A DNA stretch of 64,000 bases. Source: Schmidtea nova (taxonomy: Eukaryota). Both the position numbers and the translations under genes were made by a program. The DNA is taken from contig CM097884.1 in assembly GCA_044892505.1 (NCBI GenBank), positions 49,848,001-49,912,000 on the forward strand, in the 5' to 3' direction. How positions within the stretch are numbered: the stretch's first letter is position 1; every line of letters begins with the position of its first letter. Shown here piece after piece: positions 23,537-62,430 of the stretch. The notes beneath the pieces are model-generated. The model ran no database searches, was not told the origin of the DNA, and was given only the letters and a program-made list of their open reading frames with translations.

Positions 23537-23908
23537 GTGATGAACTTACGTCATAATTTATTCATTGAAGTTATTCAAAGTTACGTTTCCAGATTCATGA
23601 AAATGTATCACCAACTGAGCATGAATGGAAAAGATAATCATACCGATCACTCCATCGGAATCGCCAATACCGAGAGTCACAAGAAAAGGGTGTTAGGCAA
23701 TCTCAAAGCCTTACCCTGTGACGTTCTAGCAGCAGTTACTACAGCCATGATGAAATGGCGAAGTGAAAAGAAGAAGCGACCTCCTTTCTTGATATGGTCG
23801 AGCGGAATCGACGAGATATGGTGGAATGGTTGTCCCAGATGGCTAATAAGTTCGACGAGAAACTTACGAGCAGAACGCCAAGATGGTTCGTCCGAATCAC
23901 AGAACTAG
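23537..23908 (+). CDS. Unknown protein, ORF-A family copy (probably decayed)
   Basis: GC-richer island. KKRPPFLIWSSGIDEIWWNGCPRWLISS aligns with ORFs 57202-57570 and 54011-54616. Confidence 0.45.
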   Translation: MMNLRHNLFIEVIQSYVSRFMKMYHQLSMNGKDNHTDHSIGIANTESHKKRVLGNLKALPCDVLAAVTTAMMKWRSEKKKRPPFLIWSSGIDEIWWNGCPRWLISSTRNLRAERQDGSSESQN

Positions 23909-31735: not shown

Positions 31736-32247
31736 TCATTTATCGGTAACAATCAGTGCGTAGGCGCAAAAAAAAGCCCACAATCAAAATCATTATTTTG
31801 ATATTTCAGATTTGTAATAGGATTGTCAACTATTCGGTTGTGGAGTTGAAATTTATTATTTAATGCCGAATTAATCTTCTAAGCGCCAATTTTGATGTCT
31901 AGTCTATTCATATTTTTAAAGATGGGGTCAATAAAATAAGAGGTTAAAGTATTCTTACAATAAACAAACAAGACCCAGTGGCAGTTGCTTATATTGAGAG
32001 GACACAAGATTACCCTGGTCTCAAAAATTGCTTTAGGCATAGGAAATATATCAACAATCATATTTGAGCATAAAATACTCACAATAAAACATTTAATAAA
32101 AGCGAAACTAGGGTTATTGATGTGACTTTCAAAAATATAGTCAATGTCATCATCAATGAACCAACATTTTAAATCATTAATATCTAGAGTGCATTCTACA
32201 TCAGTATCGTCGGACAATGCAATACATGTTGAGGCTGATGCAGGCAC
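31736..32247 (-). pseudogene. Ulp1/SENP-like (C48) cysteine protease domain inside a larger decayed coding block (about 30480-33540)
   Basis: WFIDDDI...ILCPLNISNCHWVLFV...YFIDP, then one in-frame TAG near 31879, then QNNDFDCGLFFCAYA. The His-Asp-Cys triad and the oxyanion Gln are present. Confidence 0.8.
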
Positions 32248-39997: not shown

Positions 39998-40134
39998 TAA
40001 TATATGCCCTGATGACACGGACCTAATGAAACCTAACGAACCGGAGCCTGAACCAAAGCGTAAACGGAATAGAGTAGTAATAGAATAGTAATTTTTAGCT
40101 AACTGGTACTCAAATTTTAATTATTTATATCTAT
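39998..40134 (+). pseudogene. Isolated paralogue of the terminal exon of the 44-52.9 kb cassette array
   Basis: TTTAG|T AAT ATA TGC CCT GAT GAC... reads NICPDDTDLMKPNEPEPEPKRKRNRVVIE*, nearly identical to 52779-52851. The following intron-like sequence is cut at 40134. Confidence 0.7.
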
Positions 40135-41359
40135 TGTTGGGCTAGCTAAACAGAGGAAAGAGTAAAATAAACCTATAATAATTGAAACAAAAAGAGAAAA
40201 TATAAGATAAGAAAGGGGAATATTAAATTTAAAAGAAAAAGGGTAATATAAATAAAATATAGATGAATTACTGGTAAATTAAATATAAAAATAGATAAAT
40301 TGAGGAGATTTCCAAAATTAACCGGCATAAGAGACACCTAAAAACAAATAAAATGTAAATATTGATAATTAAAACAAAATAAAAGTATTTTTTATTAAAT
40401 AATTGTTCTGAAAAGCCGGATCACCTAGAAAGAATCGAATCGAATCTAAAAAATAAAAATTAATTAAGTAAAGAAAATAATAATTGGACCTACGGTATAG
40501 ACAATCAAACCTGATTGGTCAAGCTAGACCAGACAGATCAGTATATATACTGATCATAAATTCAGTCAAAAAAAAGATAAGAATAACAAGTTTTAGACAA
40601 CAGACTAGTATTGACACAAACTGAGACATTTAGATCAATTGCGAATTTTACATTGAAACCTAGACATTGTCACATTTCAACGGAACTTGGACCCAATCAC
40701 CAGTTTTCGGATCAATAATCTTAAGTAATTTTAAGTTTGATTTATGTATATGCTTTATGTTGTTGGTTTCGGATTGGGTTAAAACAAAAATAGTAAATTA
40801 AACTAATAATTATTTTTAAACGCTCTAGGGATTCCTCCATCCAAAACCTCACATAAAATGCTTACATATCACACGAGCACCCTCGATCATTTCCCTGTAA
40901 TAATCGAGTTGGAAATGTGCAAGGTGTTTGAACAATGATGGGCAGGTGAGCTCTATTGCTAAAACTACTCCCCATTTATGTTCACGGGTTCGTCTCGCTG
41001 CCGATAGAAGGACTTACGCTTTAAGTTTAATCTATCCGCATCCATTATCTTTCATTTCAATTATTTCTTTAGCCCCCTTTTCTTTACAATATATTTCAAC
41101 TTTCAATTTTTCTTTCGGCCCCCTTCTTTACAATATCAACAAATAATCTTTAATCAATTACAATTTATTATCTCTTTAATGTTTCTATTGTTTATTAGAT
41201 TTATGTTAATCTTATTGTTAGTTCTAATGTATAGTTAATTTATTCTATATTTTCCTTTAAATCATTTTAAATTTTTAATAAATCACATTATTTTCTATAC
41301 TTTACCATAAAATAAATACAAACAAAAATTATTTAATAAGCAAAGAAATCACAAAATTT

Positions 41360-41950
41360 CTATTCAAAGTATTTGGTAATGTCTTCATCGGAAACTACAA
41401 AATCCGTGGTTAAATCAATTTCCGGAATGTTGTTTGATCGTTGTGCCAATTGCTGGAGAACTTGTTTCTTCCAGCGACGCTGACGTGCGCCCATCTTACT
41501 CTTCTTTTTCTTCTTGACCTCTGGATTTATCGGGTTCTTTGGTGTACTGGCTACTGTTGTTGCTTGAACCTGAGAGGGTTCCTCGGTGTTCGTTCCTTTT
41601 GTGCATCCTGCTTTCTCGTCAGCCCAATGTTGATAAGTGATTGGTCGAATGAGCTGGCTGAGCTCTTGAGTTAGATACGATGCCGTTACAGATTTTAGGC
41701 ATTTCTTTAATTCCATCTTCGTCGCGTCCAATTCCATTTGTAATTCGCTGTTAGCTCGCTGAGAGCGTTGAGTTTTTGTAATTTGCATTTTCATTTGTTC
41801 TGGACTGAACCAGCTTTTCTTTAGGTTGGAGATTATGCCATCGGCTTCTTTTATTTTTTCCGATTTTCGCAGCATTTCCTTTTCGAGGCTGCGAATTATC
41901 CTCCATGCTTTGTCTAACTCGGCTTGGTTAGTTGCTGTGTTGGCTGACAT
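41360..41950 (-). CDS. Unknown 196-aa coiled-coil protein with basic and acidic C-terminal motifs (ORF-B family, intact copy)
   Basis: Open GC-richer ORF. It aligns without gaps over 63 aa to 54911-55462, and with one gap to 57863-58231. ATG lies 3 nt after a TTTTAG acceptor. Confidence 0.75.
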   Translation of the reverse strand: MSANTATNQAELDKAWRIIRSLEKEMLRKSEKIKEADGIISNLKKSWFSPEQMKMQITKTQRSQRANSELQMELDATKMELKKCLKSVTASYLTQELSQLIRPITYQHWADEKAGCTKGTNTEEPSQVQATTVASTPKNPINPEVKKKKKSKMGARQRRWKKQVLQQLAQRSNNIPEIDLTTDFVVSDEDITKYFE

Positions 41951-42079
41951 TTTCTAAAATTCAGGATTGGTTTATTAACATGAAATTAGTAGTCTTGATT
42001 CGAACGATTCTCATACTTTTGACAGTTATTAATTGCAAATTCAGGAAGAGAAAATGATGTACCTATTACACTTTCAACA

Positions 42080-42216
42080 CTGTCGCTATGTACAGCGATC
42101 AGATACCTTTATTTCATAATACATTTTATTTATTCACGCCTGTGCTATATACAGCAATCAGGATAAGAAAATTATTAAAATAAACTAAGATCCACTGCCC
42201 TATGTACAGGGTTCAG
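42080..42216 (-). repeat. Three repeated stem-loops, each containing TGTAYATA on the minus strand
   Basis: Plus strand CTG-TCGCT-ATGTAC-AGCGA-TCAG, CCTG-TGCT-ATATAC-AGCA-ATCAGG and CTG-CCCT-ATGTAC-AGGG-TTCAG. Spacing 59 and 55 nt. Confidence 0.75.
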
Positions 42217-42677
42217 GATAAGCAATTATGTTTAATTATTTATCTGGAATGTTTGAACCTATAGCCTATTGCTGCTATGTTACTTGCGTAGTAGATCACT
42301 ACGTTATTAGAGTTATCGATTTTTATGTTGTTATTAAAATTATATTTTGTACAAATTCTTAACCGTGTATCTGCCGCTCTATGCCCACAAACCCCAGATG
42401 TGACAATCGAAAAATATAGCTTAACATTCTGTGAATCTCAAGGTAAAATCAGATTAATCAAATCACAGCTATATCTGTCTCAAACTACAATCAAACCTCA
42501 ACTTAACTATAAACTCAAAAATTTAAATCGATTATAAAATAAAACTTCAACTGGCTATACTATCCAGTGAAAACTAAGGTTAGAAATCAAAAATAAAATT
42601 CCTACCCTCGTCACGGCGCTTTACACCGGTCGGACGGCCTAACTGTACGGAGCAGTCGTTTCTACTCGGCACAGTAT

Positions 42678-42969
42678 GCCTCCATTTCACCGATTGCACG
42701 GTGATCGGAGCCCCTTAAATCGTACGTAATTTCTACTGTATCTACTGTATATAAATAATATATATATATTCGCCTCCTTCCACTGATTTCACAGTAGAAG
42801 AAGCTCGACCCAAAAATGGTTTATAAAAATATACTTCAACCTAATTGTTAATATCACAACATAATGTTGCCTCCTTCCACCGATTACACGATGGAAGAAG
42901 CTCAATAAAAGGTATATAATAGATATATGAAGTCGTCTCCTACCACTGATTGCACAGTGGAAGAAGCTT
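42678..42969 (-). repeat. Four ~35-bp palindromic repeats separated by unique AT-rich spacers
   Basis: Consensus CCTCCTTCCACYG-ATTNCA-CRGTGGAAGAAGCT. Loops start at 42693, 42786, 42883 and 42949. Stems show compensatory T-A to C-G changes. Confidence 0.8.
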
Positions 42970-45900
42970 AGTTCAATTCTATATTTAATAATAATTTAAA
43001 ACATACTCAAAATATTTTATTAAAATAACCAAAATGGTCAATGACAGAACTCATAGAAAAACAAATTTATAAAAACAAGAAAAACAAAATATTTATACCT
43101 TTTATGTTGTTCACAAAATTTGCATATACAAAACAAAATTTTCAATCACTGAAAAATTTTTCACCTATCACTTTATCTATATTTTTAACTGAATCTGGAT
43201 CAGTATTTATACTGACCAGATCAGATGTTGAACCAATCAGCGTGAAGCTGATTATCAGATCAGCACAAATAATAAATTACATTAAAAATCAAATCGATTG
43301 ATTTGCTTTAAATTGCTAATAATTTGTTGTTTTTGATTTTTAATATTCTGTAATTCTTTTTCTTTATTATTTCTTTATTTTGCCTTAAATACAATTAAAT
43401 ATCATTGTTTCTTTAACACTTTTACATTTTCTATTTACTTTCTTCTAAATTTTGATAGAAAATTGATATTCTTTATTACATTTTAATTCGTTTTTACTGA
43501 TATTTTCCATAATTATATTTATTTTAATTTATTCTTATTTTATTTCTTATTATTATTATTTTTTATGCTAAATGTGGATCAAATGGTGGATCCAACATTT
43601 ACATGATTTTGTCATAATAATTACCTTTGTCATATAAATTATATTTCGTATTAATAATTTTGTTCTCTTAATCTTTTTCATACAATTTTTATATGCTAAT
43701 TTTGTGGTGTTAATGAATTGAATTATAGAACTTAAATTATGAAATTTAGTGCGCCGACGGGGAGCAATAGGTTCCCAGGGTGTCACTCCGCATCGTGTGG
43801 TTTCAGAGGCTCCACACATGGTAGAGAAATCAATAAAATTAAATAAAATTCTACAGGGTTGCACATGGAACACAAAGAATCGAGGCAAAAATTTCCGTTG
43901 CGGATAGCAGTGAGTAGGTGAGGGCACTGATTTAAATAAATTATGGCAAACAAGAATAAACCCGAGAAGCGTTATATGTTAACAAATTTAAATCCGAGGC
44001 TGTTTTTATAGGTACATTAACCCTTCTGTATTATATATATAATTTACTTACAGGAAATTGGCGACCATAAATGAAAGATTTAACGGAACAAAGTATTAAT
44101 ATAATAGTAATTTTTAGCTAACAGGTACTCAAATTTTAATTATTTATATCTATTATCCAAAAATTTATTATAAAATTTAAATAATTTTATTTAGCAGTAT
44201 AAGGCCTGAAAACGTAAAAGAACCAAAGCGGAAGCAGAAGAGTAGGCCTATAGTGTGTCCTGGGACTAGGTCTGGTTCTAGGCGTAGACCAGGACCAGAA
44301 CCGGTTCTAATTCTAGACGAGATATCTCGACCAACGTAATTAATTAATTTATTCAATAAATTATTATGTTATTGTATTTTTTTAGTCCAAGTATAACGGA
44401 TGAATATGAAGATCCTCTCTCTTGACCAAACATTACTCCGGTCTCTCAGCGAAATTAAATAATTAATATATTCAATAAATTATTATTTTATTGTATCTTT
44501 TAAGAAGTATAAGAATTATTAACATGAGACGAAATGAACGATTATAATGCCACCATCTATATTGACCAACAGAGAAATCAAAAAGACAACGAGTGGCTTC
44601 AAAGTGAAAAATATTGCCTTAATTAATATAGTCTTTATATTTAGATTTAGTCGAAATTCTTCATGGAAAAAACAGATATAACGGTAAATAAATAACTTTC
44701 TTTAATAAATATATATAATTTACTTACAAAAAATTGGCGACCATAAATGAAAGATTTTACGGAATAGAGTAGTAATGGAATAGTAATTTTTAGCTAACTG
44801 GTACTCAAATTTTAATTATTTATATCTATTATTCAAAAATTTATTATAAAATTTAAATAATTTTATTTAGCAGTATAAGGCCTGAAAACGTAAAAGAACC
44901 AAAGCGGAAGCAGAAGAGTAGGCCAATAGTGTGTCCTGGGACTAGGCCTGGTTCTACGCATAGACCAGGACCAGAACCGGTTCTAATTCTAGACGAGGTA
45001 TCTCGACCAACGTAATTAATTTATTTATTCAATAAATTATTATGTTATTGTATTTTTTTAGTCCAAGTATAACGGATGAATATGAAGATCCGAACATTAC
45101 ACTGGTCTCTCAGCGAAAGTAAATAATTATTATCTTCAATAAATAATTATTTTTTTAATCTTTTTAGAAGCGAAAGAATTATTAACAAGAGGCAAAGTGA
45201 ACAGTTTATAATGCCGCCTTCTGAGACTCTGGCAGAGAAAAGACGAATGGCTTCAAAGTAAAAAATATTACATTTAATAATATTGTCTTTATATTTAGAT
45301 TTAGTTGAAATTCTTCATTGAAAATACAGATAGAACGGTAAATAAATAATTTTTTTTAATAAATATATATAAATTACTTACAGAAAATTGGCGAAACCAA
45401 ATGTAAGATTTAACGGAAAAGAGGGGAGATTTAATGGAATAGAGTAGTAATAGAATAGTAATTTTTAGCTAACTGGTACTCAAATTTTAATTATTTATAT
45501 CTATTATCCAAAAATTTATTATAAAATTTAAATAATTTTATTTAGCAGTATAAGGCCTGAAAACGTAAAAGAACCAAAGCGGAAGCAGAAGAGTAGGCCA
45601 ATAGTGTGTCCTGGGACTAGGCCTGGTTCTACGCATAGACCAGGACCAGAACCGGTTCTAATTCTAGACGAGGTATCTCGACCAACGTAATTAATTTATT
45701 TATTCAATAAATTATTATGTTATTGTATTTTTTTAGTCCAAGTATAACGGATGAATATGAAGATCCGAACATTACACTGGTCTCTCAGCGAAAGTAAATA
45801 ATTATTATCTTCAATAAATAATTATTTTTTTAATCTTTTTAGAAGCGAAAGAATTATTAACAAGAGGCAAAGTGAACAGTTTATAATGCCGCCTTCTGAG

Positions 45901-48900
45901 ACTCTGGCAGAGAAAAGACGAATGGCTTCAAAGTAAAAAATATTACATTTAATAATATTGTCTTTATATTTAGATTTAGTTGAAATTCTTCATTGAAAAT
46001 ACAGATAGAACGGTAAATAAATAATTTTTTTTAATAAATATATATAAATTACTTACAGAAAATTGGCGAAACCAAATGTAAGATTTAACGGAAAAGAGGG
46101 GAGATTTAATGGAATAGAGTAGTAATAGAATAGTAATTTTTAGCTAACTGGTACTCAAATTTTAATTATTTATATCTATTATCCAAAAATTTATTATAAA
46201 ATTTAAATAATTTTATTTAGCAGTATAAGGCCTGAAAACGTAAAAGAACCAAAGCGGAAGCAGAAGAGTAGGCCTATAGTGTGTCCTGGGACTAGGTCTG
46301 GTTCTAGGCGTAGACCAGGACCAGAACCGGTTCTAATTCTAGACGAGATATCTCGACCAACGTAATTAATTAATTTATTCAATAAATTATTATGTTATTG
46401 TATTTTTTTAGTCCAAGTATAACGGATGAATATGAAGATCCTCTCTCTTGACCAAACATTACTCCGGTCTCTCAGCGAAATTAAATAATTAATATATTCA
46501 ATAAATTATTATTTTATTGTATCTTTTAAGAAGTATAAGAATTATTAACATGAGACGAAATGAACGATTATAATGCCACCATCTATATTGACCAACAGAG
46601 AAATCAAAAAGACAACGAGTGGCTTCAAAGTGAAAAATATTGCCTTAATTAATATAGTCTTTATATTTAGATTTAGTCGAAATTCTTCATGGAAAAAACA
46701 GATATAACGGTAAATAAATAACTTTCTTTAATAAATATATATAATTTACTTACAAAAAATTGGCGACCATAAATGAAAGATTTTACGGAATAGAGTAGTA
46801 ATGGAATAGTAATTTTTAGCTAACTGGTACTCAAATTTTAATTATTTATATCTATTATTCAAAAATTTATTATAAAATTTAAATAATTTTATTTAGCAGT
46901 ATAAGGCCTGAAAACGTAAAAGAACCAAAGCGGAAGCAGAAGAGTAGGCCAATAGTGTGTCCTGGGACTAGGCCTGGTTCTACGCATAGACCAGGACCAG
47001 AACCGGTTCTAATTCTAGACGAGGTATCTCGACCAACGTAATTAATTTATTTATTCAATAAATTATTATGTTATTGTATTTTTTTAGTCCAAGTATAACG
47101 GATGAATATGAAGATCCGAACATTACACTGGTCTCTCAGCGAAAGTAAATAATTATTATCTTCAATAAATAATTATTTTTTTAATCTTTTTAGAAGCGAA
47201 AGAATTATTAACAAGAGGCAAAGTGAACAGTTTATAATGCCGCCTTCTGAGACTCTGGCAGAGAAAAGACGAATGGCTTCAAAGTAAAAAATATTACATT
47301 TAATAATATTGTCTTTATATTTAGATTTAGTTGAAATTCTTCATTGAAAATACAGATAGAACGGTAAATAAATAATTTTTTTTAATAAATATATATAAAT
47401 TACTTACAGAAAATTGGCGAAACCAAATGTAAGATTTAACGGAAAAGAGGGGAGATTTAATGGAATAGAGTAGTAATAGAATAGTAATTTTTAGCTAACT
47501 GGTACTCAAATTTTAATTATTTATATCTATTATCCAAAAATTTATTATAAAATTTAAATAATTTTATTTAGCAGTATAAGGCCTGAAAACGTAAAAGAAC
47601 CAAAGCGGAAGCAGAAGAGTAGGCCAATAGTGTGTCCTGGGACTAGGCCTGGTTCTACGCATAGACCAGGACCAGAACCGGTTCTAATTCTAGACGAGGT
47701 ATCTCGACCAACGTAATTAATTTATTTATTCAATAAATTATTATGTTATTGTATTTTTTTAGTCCAAGTATAACGGATGAATATGAAGATCCGAACATTA
47801 CACTGGTCTCTCAGCGAAAGTAAATAATTATTATCTTCAATAAATAATTATTTTTTTAATCTTTTTAGAAGCGAAAGAATTATTAACAAGAGGCAAAGTG
47901 AACAGTTTATAATGCCGCCTTCTGAGACTCTGGCAGAGAAAAGACGAATGGCTTCAAAGTAAAAAATATTACATTTAATAATATTGTCTTTATATTTAGA
48001 TTTAGTTGAAATTCTTCATTGAAAATACAGATAGAACGGTAAATAAATAATTTTTTTTAATAAATATATATAAATTACTTACAGAAAATTGGCGAAACCA
48101 AATGTAAGATTTAACGGAAAAGAGGGGAGATTTAATGGAATAGAGTAGTAATAGAATAGTAATTTTTAGCTAACTGGTACTCAAATTTTAATTATTTATA
48201 TCTATTATCCAAAAATTTATTATAAAATTTAAATAATTTTATTTAGCAGTATAAGGCCTGAAAACGTAAAAGAACCAAAGCGGAAGCAGAAGAGTAGGCC
48301 TATAGTGTGTCCTGGGACTAGGTCTGGTTCTAGGCGTAGACCAGGACCAGAACCGGTTCTAATTCTAGACGAGATATCTCGACCAACGTAATTAATTAAT
48401 TTATTCAATAAATTATTATGTTATTGTATTTTTTTAGTCCAAGTATAACGGATGAATATGAAGATCCTCTCTCTTGACCAAACATTACTCCGGTCTCTCA
48501 GCGAAATTAAATAATTAATATATTCAATAAATTATTATTTTATTGTATCTTTTAAGAAGTATAAGAATTATTAACATGAGACGAAATGAACGATTATAAT
48601 GCCACCATCTATATTGACCAACAGAGAAATCAAAAAGACAACGAGTGGCTTCAAAGTGAAAAATATTGCCTTAATTAATATAGTCTTTATATTTAGATTT
48701 AGTCGAAATTCTTCATGGAAAAAACAGATATAACGGTAAATAAATAACTTTCTTTAATAAATATATATAATTTACTTACAAAAAATTGGCGACCATAAAT
48801 GAAAGATTTTACGGAATAGAGTAGTAATGGAATAGTAATTTTTAGCTAACTGGTACTCAAATTTTAATTATTTATATCTATTATTCAAAAATTTATTATA

Positions 48901-50566
48901 AAATTTAAATAATTTTATTTAGCAGTATAAGGCCTGAAAACGTAAAAGAACCAAAGCGGAAGCAGAAGAGTAGGCCAATAGTGTGTCCTGGGACTAGGCC
49001 TGGTTCTACGCATAGACCAGGACCAGAACCGGTTCTAATTCTAGACGAGGTATCTCGACCAACGTAATTAATTTATTTATTCAATAAATTATTATGTTAT
49101 TGTATTTTTTTAGTCCAAGTATAACGGATGAATATGAAGATCCGAACATTACACTGGTCTCTCAGCGAAAGTAAATAATTATTATCTTCAATAAATAATT
49201 ATTTTTTTAATCTTTTTAGAAGCGAAAGAATTATTAACAAGAGGCAAAGTGAACAGTTTATAATGCCGCCTTCTGAGACTCTGGCAGAGAAAAGACGAAT
49301 GGCTTCAAAGTAAAAAATATTACATTTAATAATATTGTCTTTATATTTAGATTTATTTGAAATTCTTCATGGAAAAAACCGATAGAACGGTAAATAAATA
49401 ATTTTCCTTAATAAATATATATAATTTACTTACAAAAAATTGGCGACCATAAATGAAAGATTTAACGGAATAGAGTAGTAATAGAATAGTAATTTTTAGC
49501 TAACTGGTACTCAAATTTTAATTATTTATATCTATTATCCAAAAATTTATTATAAAATTTAAATAATTTTATTTAGCAGTATAAGGCCTGAAAACGTAAA
49601 AGAACCAAAGCGGAAGCAGAAGAGTAGGCCTATAGTGTGTCCTGGGACTAGGTCTGGTTCTAGGCGTAGACCAGGACCAGAACCGGTTCTAATTCTAGAC
49701 GAGATATCTCGACCAACGTAATTAATTAATTTATTCAATAAATTATTATGTTATTGTATTTTTTTAGTCCAAGTATAACGGATGAATATGAAGATCCTCT
49801 CTCTTGACCAAACATTACTCCGGTCTCTCAGCGAAATTAAATAATTAATATATTCAATAAATTATTATTTTATTGTATCTTTTAAGAAGTATAAGAATTA
49901 TTAACATGAGACGAAATGAACGATTATAATGCCACCATCTATAATGACCAACAGAGAAATCAAAAAGACAACGAGTGGCTTCAAAGTAAATAATATTGCC
50001 TTTAATAATATTGTCTTTATATTTAGATTTAGTCGAAATTCTTCATGGAAAAAACAAATAGAACGGTAAATAAATAATTTTCTTTAATAAATATATATAA
50101 TTTACTTACAAAAAATTGGCGACCATAAATGAAAGATTTAACGGAATAGAGTAGTAATGGAATAGTAATTTTTAGCTAACTGGTACTCAAATTTTAATTA
50201 TTTATATCTATTATCCAAAAATTTATTATAAAATTTAAATAATTTTATTTAGCAGTATAAGGCCTGAAAACGTAAAAGAACCAAAGCGGAAGCAGAAGAG
50301 TAGGCCTATAGTGTGTCCTGGGACTAGGCCTGGTTCTACGCATAGACCAGGACCAGAACCGGTTCTAATACTTGACGAGGTATCTCGAACAACATAATTT
50401 ATTTATTTATTCAATATATTATTATGTTATTGTATTTTTTAGTCCAAGTATAACGGATAGACGAAATGAACGATCTGGATGCCCCAATTTATGGGAAGAA
50501 CAAATGTAAGAATTTGTTAAAATTTATTATTGAATTTACTTTTTAATTTGAGTTTTTAATTTAAAT

Positions 50567-50655
50567 AATACTTTTAATATATTATTTTTAAATCATTTTG
50601 TAATTGTTTTTCAAACCATTACAAAATGATTTAAAAGTATAATATTAAAAGTATT
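50567..50655. repeat. Long AT-rich inverted repeat (arms about 37 bp)
   Basis: AATACTTTTAATAT...TTTTAAATCATTTTGTAAT / ATTACAAAATGATTTAAAA...ATATTAAAAGTATT. Confidence 0.8.
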
Positions 50656-50669
50656 TATATTATGAAATA

Positions 50670-51186
50670 TTCATTTTACTTTTTTTTTTGATAAAAAACA
50701 TTTATGTAATAGAATTATATATATGAAACAATTTACTTTATTCATTTTTTGATAAAAAACATTTATGAAATAGAATTATATATGAAACAATTTAATTTAT
50801 TCATTTTTTGATAAGAAACATTTATGAAATAGAATTATATATGAAACAATTTAATTTATTCATTTTTTGATAAGAAACATTTATGAAATAGAATTATATA
50901 TATGAAACAATTTACTTTATTCATTTTTTGATAATAAACATTTATGAAATAGAATTATTTTTGATAAAAAACATTTATGAAATAGAATTATATATGAAAC
51001 AATTTACTTTATTCATTTTTTGATAATAAACATTTATGAAATAGAATTATATATATGAAACAATTTACTTTATTCATTTTTTGATAAAAAACATTTATGA
51101 AATAGAATTATATATGAAACAATTTACTTTATTCATTTTTTGATAATAAACATTTATGAAATAGAATTATTTTTGATAAAAAACAT
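50670..51186. repeat. Minisatellite of 59-61 bp units (two 33-bp short units)
   Basis: TTTTTTGATAA(A/T)AAACATTTATGAAATAGAATTATATATGAAACAATTTACTTTATTCA, about 10 copies. Confidence 0.92.
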
Positions 51187-51329
51187 TAAAGAAATATTTT
51201 TTATGTAACAACATATTATTATTATTATTGATATAATTTATTTTTATTTTATTTATAATGTTATATATTGAAAATTTATTTAAATATTTATTTAAATTCA
51301 GGTTTAATCTACAAAAATTTTTGCAACAG

Positions 51330-51765
51330 TAGGTTCCATAATGATTGCCATGTCATTATGGAAAAATACTACTCGTTGACATATATTACTGTTACCCACC
51401 TCCTATGTCCCACCTGTAAACTTATCGAAATTTCCAGATATCTTGATTTCTTTAATAGGCACTGTAGCCATCTTTCGCAGTTTCAGCCTTCCAAGAAAAT
51501 TTTATGTAAGGAAATTTTTCCTAATTTTATTAATAACAACAACCAAATTATTCCTATAAATAACAATAATCTAAATAATAATCTAAATAATACAAATAAT
51601 CTAAATAATACAAATAATAATCATACAAATAATTTAAATAATATCAATAATACAAATAATACAAATAATACAAATAATTTAAATAATAATAAAAGAAAAC
51701 ATATTAAAATACCGGATTCAGTTCCTACTAAAATTCAAATAATAGATCTCACTGATGATGAATAA
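51330..51765 (+). CDS. Putative exon encoding a His/Cys motif, an Asn-rich tract and an IIDLTDDE tail
   Basis: Part of ORF 51268-51765. The acceptor TTTTTGCAACAG|T at 51329 is in phase 2 with the upstream 63-nt exon 50443-50505. Reads RFHNDC...LLCPTCK...HCSH, then N-rich repeats. Confidence 0.4.
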
Positions 51766-52959
51766 TTAGTCATCAGTGATGATGAAAATTTAAATAATAA
51801 TAATTTAAATAATATTAACCAAATAGGATATGGTGCCGTCGAGATCGTAAATGATCTAAATAATAATCATATAATTATTAAAATGGACGTTGAAAATTAA
51901 AATTTGAAATATATATAATAAATATATATAATTTACTTACAAAAAATTGGCGACCATAAATAAAAGATTTAACGGAATAGAGAAGTAATAGAATAGTAAT
52001 TTTTAGCTAACTGGTACTCAAATTTTAATTATTTATATCTATTATCCAAAAATTTATTATAAAATTTAAATAATTTTATTTAGCAGTATAAGGCCTGAAA
52101 ACGTAAAAGAACCAAAGCGGAAGCAAAGAGTAGGCCTATAGTGTGTCCTGGGACTAGGCCTGGTTCTAGGTATAGACCAGGACCAGAACCGGTTCTAATT
52201 CTAGACGAGGTATCTCGAACAACATAATTAATTTATTTATTCAATATATTATTATGTTATTGTAATTTTTAGTCCAAGTATAGCGGATGAATATGAAGAT
52301 CCTCTCTCTTGACCAAACATTACTCCGGTCTCTCAGCGAAATTAAATAATTAATATATTCAATAAATTATTATTTTATTGTATCTTTTAAGAAGTATAAG
52401 AATTATTAACATGAGACGAAATGAACGATTATAATGCCACCATCTATAATGACCAACAGAGAAATCAAAAAGACAACGAGTGGCTTCAAAGTAAAAAATA
52501 TTGCCTTTAATAATATTGTCTTTATATTTAGATTTAGTCGAAATTCTTCATGGAAAAAACAGATAGAACGGTAAATAAATAATTTTCCTTAATAAATATA
52601 TATAATTTACTTACAGAAAATTGGCGACCATAAATGAAAGATTTAACGCAATAGAGGGGAGATTTAACGGAAAAGAGTAGTAATATAATAATAATTTTTA
52701 GCTAACTGGTACTCAAATTTTAATTATTTATATCTATTATCGAAAATTTTATTATTAAATTTAAATATTTTTATTTAGTAATATAAGCCCTGATGACACG
52801 GACCTAATGAAACCTAATTATCCGGAGCCTGAACCGAAGTGTAAACGTTAGATTTATTCAATAAATTCTTTCAGAAATGTATCCAGTATTTATTTAAAAA
52901 GTATTCCAAATCACCATAATTTATTCAAAGATTTTATAAAAATTTAAACAAATGTTGCG

Positions 52960-53700
52960 ACAACCTTCAAATTTTTAATCAAACCATTTTATAGAAAATT
53001 AAAGTTTAAATTTACAATACTACAATAAAAATTCAATTAAGTTACTTTATATATGTTTGCAATGTAAAATTTAATTATTAATTGTATATGCAGCGGCGGA
53101 ACTACTGGACGCAGGACCCTGCGTTGCGGGGGGGCCTACCAGCTATAGGGGGTCCTCATATAAAAAAATTATACTCTCAATAATATTTATACTATAAAAC
53201 TCTTTTCCGCAGGTATAGTGGGCCCTAAAATATAAAACTTGGATAAAAAAAATGTCATCCATCGTATTAAAATATATTGTTCAAAAATTTATTTTTGTAT
53301 TGGAGTGCGTAGTTTACATTTAAACGAAAAGTTTTACCCTTTTTATTATTAACCTTTTTATTATCTATTTAATATGTGAAGCTTTATTTTTTTAAAAAAA
53401 AACATTCTTTTGCGGGGGGGCCCAAATTTTGAAGTTCCGCCACTGTGTATATGCAACTTAAAATTAATAACTTCTAATTTTGAATCAAACCATTTTATAG
53501 AAAATTAAAATTTATTTATACTCTATTACAATGAAAACTCAAAAATTACTTCATTTAGAAGAAAAACACAAAAATTAATAACAAAACACTTGTGCATCAC
53601 AAAATTCGACAAACCAATTTTCCAACCAAGCCATTTTGTAGAAAATTAATTTTTACACAAAATTTATTAGAATAAAAACTCAAAAAATGAACCCATTTTT
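52960..53700. repeat. ~143-bp tandem repeat, left part (resumes at 58600-58870)
   Basis: AATCAA(A/G)CCATTTTRTAGAAAATT recurs near 52977, 53484, 53626, 58669 and 58812. The period is 142-144 once the MITE is removed. Confidence 0.75.
53091..53445. mobile_element. hAT-type MITE (355 bp) with 8-bp TSD
   Basis: Termini CAGCGGCGGAACT / AGTTCCGCCACTG. TSD TGTATATG at 53083-53090 and 53446-53453. TTGCGGGGGGGCC subterminal motif at both ends. Confidence 0.95.
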
Positions 53701-54010
53701 TGGGAATCATCCCAAGGATGATGATCATTGTTAGTTATTGATTGATGAGGATCGGATGGGGGATCCCTGAGAGAAATAAAAGGTATAACGACAATCTAGT
53801 GATTAATGATGCACTGATCGTGATGAAATAAATTGATTAAAATTGAGTTAAAAACAAATCAACTCAGAATGAGCTGCAACTAGACCGTCCTACATAATAT
53901 ACTCAACAACCATAATACGACCAACTCATCAGACAGGTGAGGCCTACTTGAAAACAATCACTACTCGAGTAGGTTGACCAATGTATATATATATATATAC
54001 CTGATCAAAA

Positions 54011-54616
54011 TTGATGTCATGTGATTTCAATCAACCATTTTCCGTTCAGAGAGAAACGATGAAACAGGAAAAACTTTTGGATTCGCCATTAGTCTCGCCA
54101 CCCGCGACAAAGGAGGGTCATAAATCTCGAAGGAAGCGGCAGGCCCGATCTAGCCATCCGGTGATCAATTGTAATTATATGACCGAGATCCAAGGGGAGA
54201 AGGACGCTCCTCGACCAATCGCCGAGCTAGCGCGCAGACATTTGCGTCGATGGACACGACGGCACATGAACGTGGCCGCTAATGTTCCAGCCTGCACATT
54301 CCGAGTGCAATTGCGATGGGAGGGAGATGTAAATTGGCCGTCATCCTCTAGCCATACGGAGCAGAGACCCTCACGGTGGTTCTATCAATTCCTCGATGAA
54401 TCCGATCAACCACGATGGTTGTTAAGTTCAGGAGCTATGACCGGTCAATCGCTATATCAACTGGGATATCTGCTTCTGGACAGGCCTCGGTGTAGCGACA
54501 CTGGGGAAGTCCAATCCTACTCAAACACTCCCGGAAGCGTCACGTTGGATCCCCATCCGGAACCGAATGATCTCCGCTTGTGGGAGGTGTTCATACACCA
54601 AGGCAAGCTGAGCTAG
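54011..54616 (+). CDS. Unknown protein, ORF-A family (unit X2)
   Basis: 201-codon ORF downstream of CCAAT and a TATA-like run (53978-54000). RPSRWFYQFLDESDQPRWLLSS resembles the RPPF...DE...PRWLISS motif of 23537. The true start is uncertain. Confidence 0.5.
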   Translation: MMSCDFNQPFSVQRETMKQEKLLDSPLVSPPATKEGHKSRRKRQARSSHPVINCNYMTEIQGEKDAPRPIAELARRHLRRWTRRHMNVAANVPACTFRVQLRWEGDVNWPSSSSHTEQRPSRWFYQFLDESDQPRWLLSSGAMTGQSLYQLGYLLLDRPRCSDTGEVQSYSNTPGSVTLDPHPEPNDLRLWEVFIHQGKLS

Positions 54617-54910
54617 CACCCATCCCCGGAGCTATATCACGCAGACGGGACCCGACGAGACGATAATCCAGCTGACCAAGATTTACGATCTTTCTGTTAG
54701 AAGAGAGAATGTCGCACACAGAAAAATCAGGAGATTAAGTTAATCCTATGTCATAATTAAAATAAATGTCTGTTTGAAAAAGATTTCTTGTTTTGTTTTC
54801 TGAATGCATGTAACGAGTGGATGATTAAGGAGTAGTTGATTGATCATGAAGACACGAATAGAGAGACGAATAGATTTCCACTACATCAATTAACATCAAA
54901 TATTACAGAC

Positions 54911-55462
54911 ATGAACGTGGACAACACTCGAAACTATAAACAGGAGGCTCGGGAGCACAAGGCTCGCTCCAAGGTCCTAGAGAGCCGCTTACATCAGTTA
55001 AGTGAGGAGCACCAACGCGTGAAGACGACATGGTTCAACTCCGAGAGGGTCAAGGCCATCCTACAGGCGAGATATCGCGCGGAACAGGCAGCCGAAGAGC
55101 AAGCCAGAGAAGTCGCAGCATTAAAATTGGAACTGACCAATTATCTAAAAACCTCGACGCAGGAATTCATAACCGAGCAGTTACGCCCAATGATCAGGGC
55201 AAGTACGTTCAATAAGTGGATAAAGACAATAGCAGTCACCACCAGTACTCAAACCGAAACGGAGACAACCGCAACAGCGACTACTGAGTCGATAATGATA
55301 ACTCCGGAAGGCTCTAAGAGGATTTAACGTCGAAATCGCCTCGGAGCAAAGAAACGTCGAGAGCGTCGAGCCTATGCCGAACGTCTGGGCATTGAGGTCG
55401 ATCTACTCAGTGGACTCTCCGAACAAGAACTATTAAACGTGATCCGGCCATCTGTTCTGTTA
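54911..55462 (+). pseudogene. ORF-B family coiled-coil protein (unit X2) with one internal TAA at 55325-55327
   Basis: ATG lies 2 nt after TACAG. The frame beyond the stop (RRNRLGAKKRRERR...IEVDL) matches the C-terminus of 41360-41950 (KSKMGARQRRWKK...PEIDL). Confidence 0.75.
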
Positions 55463-55786
55463 ATTTATAAAAAAATGTATTCTCATTGAATGACTTGACT
55501 TGTTTGCTTGCGGTATGTTTGAGAATTAAATGTAAAGTAAAACCGATTCATTTGAGGCTACAGACACTCTAAAAGTTAAGTTTACCCTAGGACAATAAGA
55601 GAGCGTATAATTGGGACCGAAAGAAATCCACAAACACTTTCTATCGGTAGTGGTGGACCCGTGAATAAACAAGGGAATAGTAGCCGCAAGGTTGCTCACC
55701 TGTCTTGTCATTTCACAACGTTGACACAGCACCAACATGATGAGTAGTTAGGGATACATCATGGGTGTCAGCGGGGGAATGTTTTT

Positions 55787-56400
55787 ATGTTGGCGAGATC
55801 ACCCTAACGTTTAACATCTTAATGATCTCAGTTGTCCAGCAAACCAACACACCAGCAACATTAACAAAATAGCACACAGAATAAACAAGACATTAATAAA
55901 TAACGAGAACATTTAGAAATAATAAGTTGAAAAAAAATATTTAGGAAATAATTATTATAGATGAGTATAATTAAAACAAAAATAAAATGAGAAATCAATA
56001 AAGAAATGATAAAAGTATAAAATTAATCAGAAATTAGAAAAATAACAAGAATTAGGAAATTAAATGAAATTATAAAAGGAAATAATATAATAACAAATAA
56101 AACAAATAATACGATAAAATAAAATAAAATAAAATAATTGCATGAATTGGCCAATAAAAGGCTAACTTGATTCTGATTGGCTGTCTGAGCGCCGAATTTA
56201 CTATGTAAGGAAGCGCTCAGGTTAGCTCCGCAAGGTCATTTTTTACTAGTCAGTTGTACCACTTTAAAGGTCAACTTTACTTTAGCTTAATATCACACTG
56301 CGTAGTAATTATTAGTCGAAGGAATAAGACGTTTACCACAACACTCGGGACACGTATCTGGAAAACACTGAATTCTATTTGGAAAATCGTTGTAAGTAAT
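55787..56400 (+). promoter_or_regulatory. LTR-like promoter module between units X2 and X3
   Basis: Preceded by purine tract AGCGGGGGAA (about 55770-55779). TGTTGG start, A-rich tract, CTGATTGG at 56173, GTAAGT donor at about 56392. Confidence 0.5.
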
Positions 56401-57201: not shown

Positions 57202-57570
57202 ATGACAATGCCACTCAAGGAGATCCCAACCGAGTTGGCGCAGGAGATATTCACCGAACATCGTCAAGAGTTTGAAAGAACCGGAGCTGTCCCATCTTTT
57301 AGTCTATTCCGGGACAGCCCCGACGAAATAATATGGCATGGCAGTAAGAAGTGGCCGATCGATGAAGATCGACCTTACTCGCCCAGTTTGGCGAAATATT
57401 TTGTCGAAACCCCCACTGAAATACTTGGCCGGTTTCAGATTTACTTCAGCGGACGCTTCGTATTTGCTCCCGCTCCATCTCCCAATCCAACCGACTCTCC
57501 TATCAGTTCCTCAGCGTTGAGTGAGGATATCGAGGATTCCAGTGAAGTTAAATTAGATAACAATTATTGA
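57202..57570 (+). CDS. Unknown 122-aa protein, ORF-A family (unit X3)
   Basis: PSFSLFRDSPDEIIWHGSKKWPI aligns without gaps to PPFLIWSSGIDEIWWNGCPRWLI at 23537. Acidic, Pro/Ser-rich tail. Confidence 0.6.
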   Translation: MTMPLKEIPTELAQEIFTEHRQEFERTGAVPSFSLFRDSPDEIIWHGSKKWPIDEDRPYSPSLAKYFVETPTEILGRFQIYFSGRFVFAPAPSPNPTDSPISSSALSEDIEDSSEVKLDNNY

Positions 57571-57862
57571 TCCTGAATGTGCGTATCATCGATGTTTAGT
57601 AGTATAATATATCTTTAGTTTCGTTAACTATTCTTGTTCTGTGTTGTCTAAATTTGGTTTTATAAAGTAATAAATAGAGTAAATTGTAGTGTAGAAATTT
57701 GCAGAGTAGACCCGGACGAGGTATAGATGTCTGAAGTAAGTAAAGAGAAGTGAGCATAGAGTCGTTAAGGGCAAATAAGATGAAGTGTTGCATTCACTGG
57801 GAGTCATTGTTGTCAACCCGTAAATCGTGAGAGAAATTTAGAAGATTATCACATAGGAAGCA

Positions 57863-58231
57863 ATGTCAACCGAGGAAAAGGCACTATGGCGGTTGAAACG
57901 GAGACTCATCAGCATCGAGAGCAGTTATTTCACTCATGGCGGAATGAAGGCGGTCAAAGACAATTTACTAAGAGCAACCTAGGTCATCCAGGACCAACAG
58001 AGAGAATTGGAAGCGGTACAAATTGTACTGAAAAATTGTCGAAAAATTGTCATAACAGAGAAGTTCATTGCGGATAATTTGAAGGAATTAATTCTTCCTG
58101 TGACCCTGGAGAAATGGTTTCCCGCGCGAAATAAATCGGGAAGTACAGTCCTCAAGGCGACTAAAACAACCTCGCCGACCAAAAGGAAAAGACACACTCA
58201 CAGCGACGCAACCAGACTAAGCTTAGGTTGA
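57863..58231 (+). pseudogene. ORF-B family coiled-coil protein (unit X3) with one internal TAG at 57980-57982
   Basis: MSTEEKALWRLKRRLISIESSYFTHGGMKAVKDNLLRAT*VIQDQQRELEAVQIVLKNC...LKELILPVTLEKW. ATG lies 6 nt after CATAG. Confidence 0.7.
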
Positions 58232-59199
58232 CAAACGAACTAAATAAAGCTGCAGCCGAGATCGATTCAACCACAAATGCAACCAATGGGATCGATAATT
58301 CACTGTGGAATGTAAATTAATGTTATGAGAGTGAATGCGTGTATAATTGAGGATCCTTGTTGTTCTTCTTTGATAAAGTTCTATCATAGATTGATAGTAG
58401 TAGTGATTTCAGGGAAAATTGAATTTTATTGAGTAGGCTAATAAAGTGTTGTAATGCCGAGTACCTAAGACAATTTTTTTTTGAATATGGATTTAAGGGA
58501 CAAGAAAAGAGACTGAAAAAGACCACCCGGAAAGAGTGACCAGAGAAGGGTGAGGGGAAAGAGAATAAGACCTTCTATCGGCCAGTTAGAACCCGAACTA
58601 AAATTAATAACAAAAAATTAATAACAAAACACGTGTGTAACACGAAAAACGACAACTTTTAAATTTAGAATCAAGCGATTTTATAGAAATTTAAATTTTA
58701 TCTATACTTTATTACAATGAAAACTCAAAAAATTATTTTAAATAGCTAAAACTTACAAAATTAATAACAAAACACATGTACATCACAAAATACGACAATT
58801 TTCAGATTTTTAATCAAGCCATCTTGTAAACAATAAAATTCTGTCTATCTTTTGTTTCACTAAAAACTCAATCGGGCCGGTTAATCGACTCGAAAAAGGC
58901 ATTTAAGGTTTTGTAGTAGGAGGCTATCTTCTGTCTGCGCCAATATCCGCAAATGGGCATAATATATAATCGCTCGGGTTTACGTAGTACACGTTATTAC
59001 ATAATCATTGTAATTAAGTATATTTAATGAAACTCAATAATTATGTAATTACACATATAATTACGTAATTTTATATATTTGTTTAAGTTAAGTGAATTTT
59101 TGTTTTAATTAACTGGAATACTTGTTTTAATTAGATGACTTTTTTGTTTTAATTTAATAAAAATATGAAAATTTCATTTTAAATTTAATAAAAAATATG

Positions 59200-61944: not shown

Positions 61945-62430
61945 AAGTTGTATTTAAAAATTTTGAATGCCTTCAGACAACAGGCATTCAGGGAAAAAAC
62001 TATGTATAATTCCATTTATTAAAACAATTTATAAAATAAAATTTCATAAATTTTAAATATTATTTTAAAAGTACATTTTTAATTTTTCTTTAAATGATTG
62101 ATAAAATTTTAATTTTTAATGAATTTTAAAAATTGTTTCAAAAAATCATTCATTTAATTTTAACAAAACAAATTTTATTATTATTTAAATACAAAGTTGT
62201 ATTTAAAAATTTTGAATGCCTTCAAACAGGCATTCAGGGAAAAAAACTATGTATAATTCCATTTATTAAAACAATTTATAAAATAAAATTCCATAAATTT
62301 TAAATATTATTTTAAAAGTGCATTTTTAATTTTTCTTTAAATGATTGATAAAATTTAATTTTTAATGAATTTTAAAAATTGTTTTAAAAAAGTTATTCAT
62401 TTAATTTTAACAAAACATATTTTATTATTA
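61945..62430. repeat. Tandem duplication, period 249 bp, each copy with a 9-bp hairpin
   Basis: 61945-62183 is about equal to 62194-62430. Both carry TGAATGCCT...AGGCATTCA. Confidence 0.9.

What the first reader, a model, noticed from the sequence alone, without database searches (positions are those of the whole stretch)
41360..41950. ORF-B: three copies of an unrecognised coiled-coil protein family
The ORFs at 41360-41950 (-), 54911-55462 (+) and 57863-58231 (+) align over 63 residues with a shared pattern [WY]F-x5-K-x7-R-x10-E-x2-A-x4-L-x4-K...L-x3-I...T-x3-W (X1 and X2 without gaps, X3 with one insertion). X1 and X2 then share a Thr-rich linker, a basic GA[RK]xRR patch and an acidic I/V-D-L tail. 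This looks like an oligomerising nucleic-acid-binding protein (nucleocapsid, ORF1p or NLS/SIM-bearing type), but that is inference. Motif conservation against strong nucleotide divergence suggests purifying selection. Only X1 is intact.
Basis: partly seen in the sequence, partly recalled or inferred. Interest (0 to 1): 0.85.

Follow-up and report, generated by a model that had tools for sequence, protein, structure and literature searches.

The report
Orphan helical protein with conserved RNA tail
Three very diverged copies of a small helical, basic protein gene with no detectable relatives sit in the repeat-rich DNA of an unidentified animal. Each is followed by the same folded RNA element, so they look most like the cargo of an unclassified mobile element rather than an ordinary host gene.

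Summary
The three ORFs are homologous: BLASTP E=7e-11, 8e-8 and 3e-4, and Smith-Waterman z=9-15 against plain and heptad-preserving shuffles. X1 is intact. X2 and X3 each carry one in-frame stop.

Codon-position identity in the X1/X2 core is 0.49/0.61/0.25, against about 0.27 expected by composition. That indicates long purifying selection with saturated silent sites.

I found no relative anywhere: Pfam, PHROGs, PDB sequences, Foldseek against PDB and BFVD, a word-indexed search of 5.8 billion proteins, and a profile search of 1.84 billion representatives.

New here:
- Every copy is followed on the same strand by a shared non-coding domain of about 200 nt ("D"), which in X3 is cut short. D is the only part still alike at DNA level (z=17). 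It folds into six helices with 11 compensatory pairs and a GCAA-capped hairpin.
- X2 and X3 are each preceded, at equal spacing, by a second weakly related small ORF (ORF-A).

Best reading (confidence about 0.4): units of an unclassified, polymerase-less, RNA-borne mobile element. ORF-B would be its own multimerising RNA-binding protein, playing an ORF1p/Gag-like role, and D its cis signal.

Membership of the ORF1p, Gag, esterase-ORF1p, delta-antigen and bZIP families was tested and not met. "Coiled coil" is only weakly supported. Element ends, duplications and a partner element could not be found.

The parts
41360..41950 (-). X1, the intact ORF-B (196 aa). It has an N-terminal helix, a conserved helical core, a disordered Thr/Ser/Pro-rich linker, a basic helix and an acidic tail.
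54911..55489 (+). X2, an ORF-B broken by one in-frame stop. It is otherwise collinear with X1 through the core, linker, basic patch and acidic tail.
57863..58231 (+). X3, an ORF-B broken by one in-frame stop. It has a short N-terminus and a basic end, but no alignable acidic tail.
40797..41014 (-). D domain of unit E1: a conserved structured non-coding domain starting about 350 nt downstream of the X1 stop codon.
55634..55832 (+). D domain of unit E2, starting about 150 nt downstream of the end of X2.
58566..58596 (+). Head of a D domain in unit E3, about 340 nt downstream of X3. It is cut off where a 143-bp tandem array begins.
   Evidence: z=6.7 against E1's D; not significant with the covariance model
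54059..54616 (+). ORF-A of unit E2 (185 aa from its ATG), ending 294 nt before the X2 ATG.
57202..57570 (+). ORF-A of unit E3 (122 aa), ending 292 nt before the X3 ATG.
23537..23908 (+). Solitary ORF-A relative. It shares the W-x-G-x3-W core and has no ORF-B or D next to it.
42670..42960 (-). Upstream non-coding stretch of unit E1: four repeated hairpins of 9-12 bp, each capped by a U-GNRA-U loop.
   Evidence: z=-4.9, 0 of 200 shuffles
40510..40580 (+). Left arm of an inverted repeat of about 65 nt around unit E1. It holds an inverted CCAAT box and a TATA-centred palindrome.
43173..43260 (-). Right arm of the same inverted repeat, a promoter-like unit about 1.25 kb upstream of X1.
55860..56140 (+). 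A-rich tract after E2's D domain, ending in (ATAAA)n. A similar tract lies at 43300-43566 (-), upstream of the E1 promoter-like arm.

Best explanation
The three ORFs are the protein-coding cargo of three deeply diverged lineages of one unclassified repeat unit in an animal genome.

The unit consists of:
- a long, partly hairpin-rich upstream stretch;
- an optional small ORF-A;
- ORF-B;
- a structured domain of about 200 nt (D) on the same strand;
- in one case, an A-rich tract after D.

No unit carries a polymerase, integrase or transposase.

I read it as a non-autonomous element that travels as RNA. ORF-B would be its own multimerising, RNA-coating or packaging protein, in the role that ORF1p or Gag plays elsewhere. 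It would bind through the basic helix after the linker, and would be sent to the nucleus by the Lys/Arg patch. D would be the cis signal that a reverse transcriptase or replicase supplied in trans recognises.

Shown: homology, selection on the protein, linkage of ORF-B with D, and the conserved fold of D on the sense strand.

Inferred: transcription of ORF-B and D as one RNA, binding of the protein to that RNA, oligomerisation, and mobility itself.
For: 1. Homology and purifying selection are established. Each broken copy has a single stop where 7-10 are expected, so each lineage was coding until recently.

2. D follows ORF-B on the same strand in 3 of 3 copies. It is the only stretch still alike as DNA: z=17.3, against -0.5 for the coding DNA. 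Covariance models of D find nothing else in the 64 kb.

3. D has 32 pairs in 6 helices. All are paired in both full copies. Eleven pairs changed on both sides, against at most 1 in slid controls. Several G-U pairs would be mismatches on the other strand. One hairpin keeps a GCAA loop while 4 of its 7 pairs covary.

4. The order of parts is kept. ORF-A ends 294 nt (E2) and 292 nt (E3) before ORF-B.

5. The setting is a repeat graveyard: three decayed LTR retrotransposons, a hAT element and two tandem arrays. Two of the three copies are pseudogenes.

6. There are no homologues among 1.84 billion representative proteins, as is usual for fast-evolving element-borne proteins.

7. Protein layout: long helices, a disordered linker, a basic helix with net charge +7 to +8, and an acidic end.
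Against: - No element ends, target-site duplications or tail-to-target junctions could be defined.
- Only one unit has an A-rich tract after D, and it is not a clean poly(A).
- E1 lacks ORF-A.
- CCAAT/TATA-like units lie upstream of the units. An RNA copy would not carry them.
- No element carrying a reverse transcriptase and sharing D is in the window.
- With three copies and no genome, copy number and mobility are unknown.
- The D structure rests on two full sequences, and it was derived from those same sequences.
- AT-rich DNA offers possible poly(A) signals between ORF-B and D, so they may not be on one RNA.
Confidence: 0.4

Rival explanations
1. A lineage-restricted host gene family. ORF-B would be a small nuclear protein with a helical multimerisation domain, a nuclear localisation patch and a SUMO-interaction-like acidic tail. 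Its mRNA would be regulated through a conserved 3' UTR structure. One gene is functional (X1) and two are dead paralogues.
For: - X1 is intact and has an upstream CCAAT/TATA unit.
- The protein is under purifying selection.
- No ends or target duplications were found.
- No transposition enzyme lies in the units.
Against: - Three paralogues at about 30% identity lie within 17 kb of repeat-only DNA, and two are dead.
- D is conserved far better than the coding DNA in copies that include a pseudogene.
- A second ORF sits at a fixed distance upstream.
- No orthologue exists in any annotated animal proteome.
Confidence: 0.2
2. Endogenous viral fragments. These would be DNA copies of the 3' portions or subgenomic RNAs of several related RNA viruses of the host. 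ORF-B would be a nucleocapsid-like protein and D the viral 3' replication signal.
For: - A basic helical protein is followed by a conserved structured 3' domain and, in E2, an A-rich tract.
- The copies are so diverged that separate captures are plausible.
- Such fragments gather in repeat-rich loci (established knowledge).
Against: - There is no hit to any viral protein or fold: BFVD best E=0.06, Pfam, and a protein library that includes metagenomes.
- No polymerase fragment lies nearby.
- The A-rich tract is not a decayed homopolymer, although the ORF next to it is almost intact.
- The 1.2-kb stretch upstream of X1 in E1 holds no sense-strand ORF of 50 aa or more.
Confidence: 0.15
3. A DNA-level element: either a non-autonomous transposon bounded by the inverted repeat of about 65 nt seen around E1, or a small circular episome that integrated.
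For: - An inverted repeat flanks E1: 43 nt gapless at 72%, about 65 nt with gaps.
- CTGATTGG occurs 6 times against 1.3 expected.
- The 4.9-kb E2-E3 block sits inside a 143-bp tandem array whose two sides are nearly in phase.
Against: - No target duplication lies next to the arms, and there are no comparable arms around E2 or E3.
- The arms look like promoter units.
- D's G-U pairs point to an RNA function.
- The circular-permutation reading failed its test.
- The phase match of the array has a tolerance of about 25 of 143 nt, so it is weak.
Confidence: 0.1

Closest known systems
HAL1 ('half-L1'), non-autonomous LINE-1 derivatives that encode only ORF1p (PMC5753468)
   Same: A retroelement-like unit that keeps a selected gene for a helical, basic RNA-binding protein, has no reverse transcriptase of its own, and would depend on a partner.
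   Different: - ORF-B shows no homology to L1 ORF1p and no RRM or C-terminal domain.
- No partner element is known.
- No poly(A) plus target duplication was shown.
- A second small ORF and a long structured upstream stretch are present.
3' tails of 'stringent' LINE/SINE pairs, whose secondary structure the LINE protein recognises (PMC5786205)
   Same: A conserved structured 3' domain is kept by covariation while the rest of the unit diverges beyond recognition. In one unit it is followed by an A-rich or simple-repeat tract.
   Different: - D is about 200 nt with six helices, larger than a typical tail.
- No LINE sharing it is available.
- No Rfam family matches.
First-ORF proteins of non-LTR retrotransposons in general (ORF1p types; PMC3905857)
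   Same: The position upstream of the 3' signal, the predicted helical multimerisation part, the basic nucleic-acid-binding part, and the lack of conservation outside a lineage.
   Different: None of the defining domains (RRM, CCHC knuckle, PHD, esterase) is present. The only esterase hit is below threshold: 18.6 bits against a cut-off of 27.
Small delta antigen of deltaviruses (an architecture recalled from knowledge, not a hit)
   Same: A protein of roughly 200 residues with an N-terminal helical multimerisation part, a nuclear localisation patch and an arginine-rich RNA-binding part, encoded next to highly structured RNA.
   Different: - No sequence, profile or fold match was found.
- No ribozyme of any Rfam family lies in or near the units.
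- Promoter-like DNA and ORF-A have no counterpart in deltaviruses.

Membership tests
LINE-1 type ORF1p | RRM and C-terminal domain detectable by profile (Pfam families of L1 ORF1p) | tested here: not met
   No Pfam hit at E<=1 other than unrelated sub-threshold ones. There are no PDB sequence hits and no Foldseek hit below E=0.78.
LINE-1 type ORF1p | N-terminal trimeric coiled coil | tested here: inconclusive
   A heptad signal occurs only in X1 residues about 6-55 (18 of 500 shuffles as good). None occurs in X2 or X3. X1 and X2 differ by a seven-residue gap in that helix. Oligomeric state is not testable here.
Retroviral / LTR-retrotransposon Gag | Capsid fold and/or CCHC zinc knuckle | tested here: not met
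   The translations contain no CCHC pattern. No Gag family appears in Pfam. Profile comparison with the gag-position ORF of the neighbouring Ty3/gypsy element gives probability 0.2%.
Esterase-bearing ORF1p (CR1/ZfL2 type) | SGNH/GDSL esterase domain | tested here: not met
   PC-Esterase scores 18.6 bits against a cut-off of 27, E=0.0019, in X1 only and spanning its disordered linker.
ORF1-only non-autonomous LINE (HAL1-like) | No reverse transcriptase inside the unit | tested here: met
   No RT, endonuclease or integrase domain was found in the ORFs tested at 40.1-44.0 kb and 53.7-58.6 kb. The RT domains found in the window lie in a separate LTR element. The other two LTR elements were recognised from integrase matches or from their translations.
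ORF1-only non-autonomous LINE (HAL1-like) | 3' end shared with an autonomous partner | not testable with these tools
   The source genome is not in any collection. Models of D find no other copy in the window.
ORF1-only non-autonomous LINE (HAL1-like) | A-rich 3' tail and target-site duplication | tested here: inconclusive
   An A-rich tract ending in (ATAAA)n follows E2 only. The best candidate duplication is a 9-mer that chance can give.
Delta-antigen-like proteins | Profile match to the delta antigen family, with self-cleaving ribozymes in the unit | tested here: not met
   No Pfam or PDB match. No ribozyme family in Rfam at E<=5.
bZIP transcription factors | Basic region directly followed by a leucine zipper | tested here: not met
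   The basic patch of X2 scores 16.8 bits against a cut-off of 27.6. The long helices lie N-terminal to the patch and are separated from it by a disordered linker.
Known structured RNA families (Rfam 15) | Covariance-model match for D or for the upstream hairpins | tested here: not met
   No match at gathering score in the window. None at E<=5 over E1. Over the E2-E3 block there are only weak C/D-box-like matches outside D.

The most novel reading that the evidence does not exclude
ORF-B plus D could be the core of a so far undescribed class of polymerase-less, RNA-borne genetic parasite of invertebrates, satellite-like in its logic. The unit would encode only its own coat or chaperone protein, which recognises GNRA-capped hairpins in its own RNA. 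It would borrow replication or reverse transcription from an unrelated helper. This would explain the total lack of protein homologues and a cis domain conserved far beyond the coding sequence.
Probability: 0.12. Interest if true: 0.7.

Novelty: new variant of a known kind. Interest (0 to 1): 0.4.

Why it matters
If the reading is right, this is an element family defined by a protein with no detectable relatives and by a structured RNA signal that outlasts all coding similarity. A protein paired with its own RNA signal would give a concrete way to ask two questions in a poorly sampled animal lineage: how polymerase-less elements secure their own RNA for a helper enzyme, and how orphan element proteins arise. 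If it is instead a host gene family, it is a lineage-specific nuclear protein with an unusually conserved 3' UTR structure. Either way the practical value is modest until the source genome can be surveyed.

Tried and rejected
1. Circular permutation or partial tandem.
- The 4.9-kb E2-E3 block starts with GAACCC and ends with GAACCCGAAC inside E3's D head. I therefore tested whether its left end (53689-53830) is the missing second part of a D domain.
- Smith-Waterman gives only z=2.7 and 1.3, and the covariance model of that part finds nothing there. Rejected as unsupported.
- The near-continuous phase of the flanking 143-bp array has a tolerance of about 25 of 143 nt and is weak evidence of a clean insertion.

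2. tRNA-derived or primer-binding-site reading of the D head. ARAGORN finds no tRNA in the window.

3. Ribozymes (hammerhead, HDV-like, twister and others). None was found.

4. LTRs or terminal repeats around the units. There are none except the E1 inverted repeat.

5. Telomere-type repeats as in Athena/Penelope-like elements. None was found.

6. Relatives of D in metagenomes. All 82 pattern hits belong to one locus, recovered mostly from human-gut metagenome contigs, that lacks further D features.

7. ORF-A.
- No family, no PDB hit and no relation to ORF-B.
- Its AlphaFold2 model has pLDDT 55, too poor to search with.

8. A fourth ORF-B near 16.6-17.8 kb. The weak hits (E=0.24-1.4) lie in the gag region of a decayed LTR element and are chance.

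9. Host identification.
- An adenosylhomocysteinase exon is 89% identical to an unnamed ENA metagenome contig. Its best named hits are 76-78% (Schistosoma, Acipenser, Plectus, Arion).
- The hAT transposase is 46-50% identical to mollusc proteins.
- So the source is an animal, probably an invertebrate, and is not in the collections.

10. Target-site duplications. None is convincing.

Full report
**Setting**

The window is AT-rich (about 30% G+C) animal DNA made almost wholly of repeats.
- A two-exon adenosylhomocysteinase gene lies at 10509-12054 (-). Its best named relatives are animal proteins at 76-78% identity.
- An intact hAT transposase ORF lies at 26458-28299. Its nearest relatives, at 46-50%, are in molluscs.
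- Three decayed LTR retrotransposons lie at about 1.4-5.0 kb (+), 15.3-18.1 kb (-) and 33.5-38.2 kb (+).
- A 675-bp satellite array lies at 44.0-52.8 kb.
- A 143-bp array lies on both sides of 53.7-58.6 kb.
- Exact look-ups of two window proteins find nothing, so the source genome is not in the collections.

**The observation**

The three ORFs exist where stated, and they are homologous.
- BLASTP gives E=7e-11 (X1/X2), 8e-8 (X1/X3) and 3e-4 (X2/X3).
- In a six-frame search of the window the two other copies stand far above the noise: 1.5e-15 and 7.8e-8, against 1.1 for the next hit.
- Local alignment scores exceed all 2000 shuffles, including shuffles that keep any heptad register, with z=9.3-14.9.
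- The quoted motif string is correct, including the single inserted residue in X3.
- The shared Thr-rich linker, basic patch and acidic end of X1 and X2 are visible. As a separate alignment they are only marginal (z about 3).
- X1 is intact. X2 has one in-frame stop. X3 has one in-frame stop and lacks an alignable tail. Shuffled sequence of the same make-up would carry 7-11 stops.
- I searched the pieces on either side of each stop apart and joined nothing.

**Selection**

In the ungapped 67-codon core of X1 and X2, identity is 0.49 at first codon positions, 0.61 at second and 0.25 at third. Composition alone predicts about 0.27. As DNA the coding regions are no more alike than shuffles (z=-0.5). 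This is the signature of an old family kept by selection on the protein.

**The protein**

- AlphaFold2 with the three-sequence alignment gives a mediocre model (mean pLDDT 63, pTM 0.26).
- The model has helices at 3-45 and 50-87, short helices at 90-97 and 103-113, a disordered stretch at 115-151, a helix at 155-173 and a short terminal helix.
- The family-defining block (X1 residues 43-109) is the turn with the WF motif, the second long helix and the two short helices. It is not the N-terminal helix, whose length differs between copies.
- Only X1's N-terminal helix shows a heptad signal, and that signal is marginal.
- The gap between X1 and X2 in that helix is exactly seven residues.
- Net charge is +7 over X1 151-175 and -6 over 176-196. 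X2 shows the same switch, +8 then -3.
- The protein is therefore helix-rich with a basic helix and an acidic end. 'Coiled coil' is possible but not established.

**Relatives**

None were found.
- Pfam: only sub-threshold chance hits.
- PHROGs: nothing.
- PDB sequences: nothing, by profile or by single sequence.
- Foldseek: best E=0.78 against PDB and 0.06 against BFVD, all generic helical matches.
- Word-indexed search of 5.8 billion proteins, which sees only 0.55-1.75 times the query length: nothing.
- Profile search without a length limit over 1.84 billion representatives: 0 proteins at E<=0.001.

**What surrounds the ORFs**

This is the new information.

1. The D domain.
- About 350, 150 and 340 nt downstream of X1, X2 and X3, on the coding strand, lies a shared non-coding domain that I call D. 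It begins TTCTATCGG...GAACCCG.
- It is complete (about 200 nt) after X1 and X2. After X3 only the first 30 nt remain, where the 143-bp array begins.
- D of E1 and D of E2 align with z=17.3, and E1's D aligns with the E3 head at z=6.7. Nothing else in the units is alignable as DNA.
- RNAalifold predicts 32 pairs in six helices. All are paired in both sequences, and 11 changed on both sides. Sliding the partners by 1-3 columns leaves 32-48% of cells paired and at most one such pair.
- Several pairs are G-U, so the fold belongs to the sense strand.
- One hairpin keeps a GCAA tetraloop while four of its seven pairs covary.
- Caveat: there are only two full sequences, and the structure was derived from them.
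- Two covariance models of D find only these copies in the window.
- Rfam has no match.

2. ORF-A.
- X2 and X3 are preceded by another ORF, ending 294 and 292 nt before the ORF-B start.
- The two ORF-As and a solitary ORF at 23537-23908 share a W-x-G-x3-W core. The E3 ORF-A against the solitary ORF gives E=9e-6. The E2 ORF-A is linked only by the motif.
- All three are free of stops where 6-8 are expected.
- E1 has no ORF-A. Its 1.2-kb upstream stretch holds four repeated hairpins with U-GNRA-U loops instead (z=-4.9).

3. A-rich tracts. One of about 280 nt ending in (ATAAA)n follows E2's D. A similar tract lies upstream of E1.

4. The inverted repeat around E1. It is about 65 nt and holds an inverted CCAAT box and a TATA-centred palindrome. 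CTGATTGG occurs six times in the window against 1.3 expected.

**Interpretation**

ORF-B is not a lone gene. It is one part of a unit with a kept order: (ORF-A) - ORF-B - D.
- D is conserved as RNA structure in lineages whose silent sites are saturated, so D is a functional cis element.
- The units lie among dead repeats, two of three are freshly broken, and no annotated proteome has the protein.
- The reading that best joins these facts is a non-autonomous element that travels as RNA. ORF-B would be its own RNA-binding, probably multimeric protein, and D the signal read by an enzyme supplied in trans.
- The closest known logic is HAL1, the ORF1p-only derivative of L1 (PMC5753468), together with the structured 3' tails that stringent LINE proteins recognise (PMC5786205).
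- That is a statement about how it may work, not about membership. Every defining domain of ORF1p, Gag, esterase-ORF1p, delta antigen and bZIP was looked for and not found (see the membership table).
- Confidence is about 0.4, because ends, duplications, copy number, a partner and the transcript are all unknown.

**Rivals**

- A host gene family with a regulated 3' UTR (0.2).
- Captured 3' portions of RNA viruses, with ORF-B as a nucleocapsid-like protein (0.15).
- A DNA-level element bounded by the inverted repeat, or a circular one (0.1).

Their evidence is set out in the Rival explanations section.

**Rejected**

The circular-permutation idea for the E2-E3 block, tRNA or primer-site readings of D, ribozymes, LTRs, telomeric repeats, metagenome matches to D (one unrelated locus, recovered mostly from human-gut metagenome contigs), and a fourth copy.

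- I did not scan the viral contig collection with the element's protein or motif. The host is an animal, so a positive result would have fetched an animal-virus contig. Proteins of that kind were, as far as I can tell, already covered.
- Two slips, both in my reasoning only. I recalled from memory a short arginine-rich peptide of a phage protein and a short SUMO-interaction peptide of a human protein. The 'SUMO-interaction-like' label for the acidic tail therefore rests on recollection only and is a lead, not a test.

Noticed in passing
window 44033-52800: A 675-bp satellite array with a higher-order period of about 2026 bp (three units), 95-100% identical between equivalent units. A 75-nt piece of the unit also lies at 40063-40138, on the far side of unit E1.
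   Followed up: partly
window 52958-53688 and 58597-58871: A 143-bp AT-rich tandem array lies on both sides of the 4.9-kb E2-E3 block. The two sides are in phase to within about 25 nt.
   Followed up: partly
window 26458-28299 (+): An intact 613-aa hAT transposase ORF with a BED finger and the hAT dimerisation domain. Its nearest relatives are only 46-50% identical, in molluscs.
   Followed up: partly
window 53714-53772 and 53800-53861 (+): Two adjacent weak C/D-box snoRNA-like matches (22.9 and 22.7 bits, well under gathering scores) lie just upstream of the E2 ORF-A.
   Followed up: no
window 5341-5385: A 24-mer resembling the head of D (2 mismatches, minus strand) directly abuts a CTGATTGG/CCAATCAG box, downstream of a decayed LTR-element pol. 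No ORF-B is nearby.
   Followed up: partly
window 31879-32247 (-): A weak, sub-threshold match to the Ulp1 (SUMO protease, Peptidase_C48) catalytic domain: 19.1 bits against a cut-off of 20.7. It may be a fragment of a DNA transposon that carries such a domain.
   Followed up: no
window 41951-41960 (-), 54900-54910 (+), 57850-57862 (+): In all three copies a YAG that could be a splice acceptor lies 2-6 nt before the ORF-B ATG, and GT sites lie 95-135 nt upstream. In AT-rich DNA this can be chance, and it needs cDNA to settle.
   Followed up: no
window 42040-42300 (-): There is a second set of three short repeated hairpins (5-bp stems with compensatory differences, UAUA/UACA loops) between the GNRA hairpin array and X1. 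The region as a whole is not unusually stable (z=-1.1).
   Followed up: partly
window 51268-51765 (+) and 61945-62430: An Asn-rich ORF is built from 9- to 12-nt repeats. Separately, there is a 247-bp tandem duplication at 95% identity.
   Followed up: no
window 2752-3097 (+): A 173-bp exact-phase tandem duplication (99% identical) lies inside the pol region of the first LTR retrotransposon.
   Followed up: no
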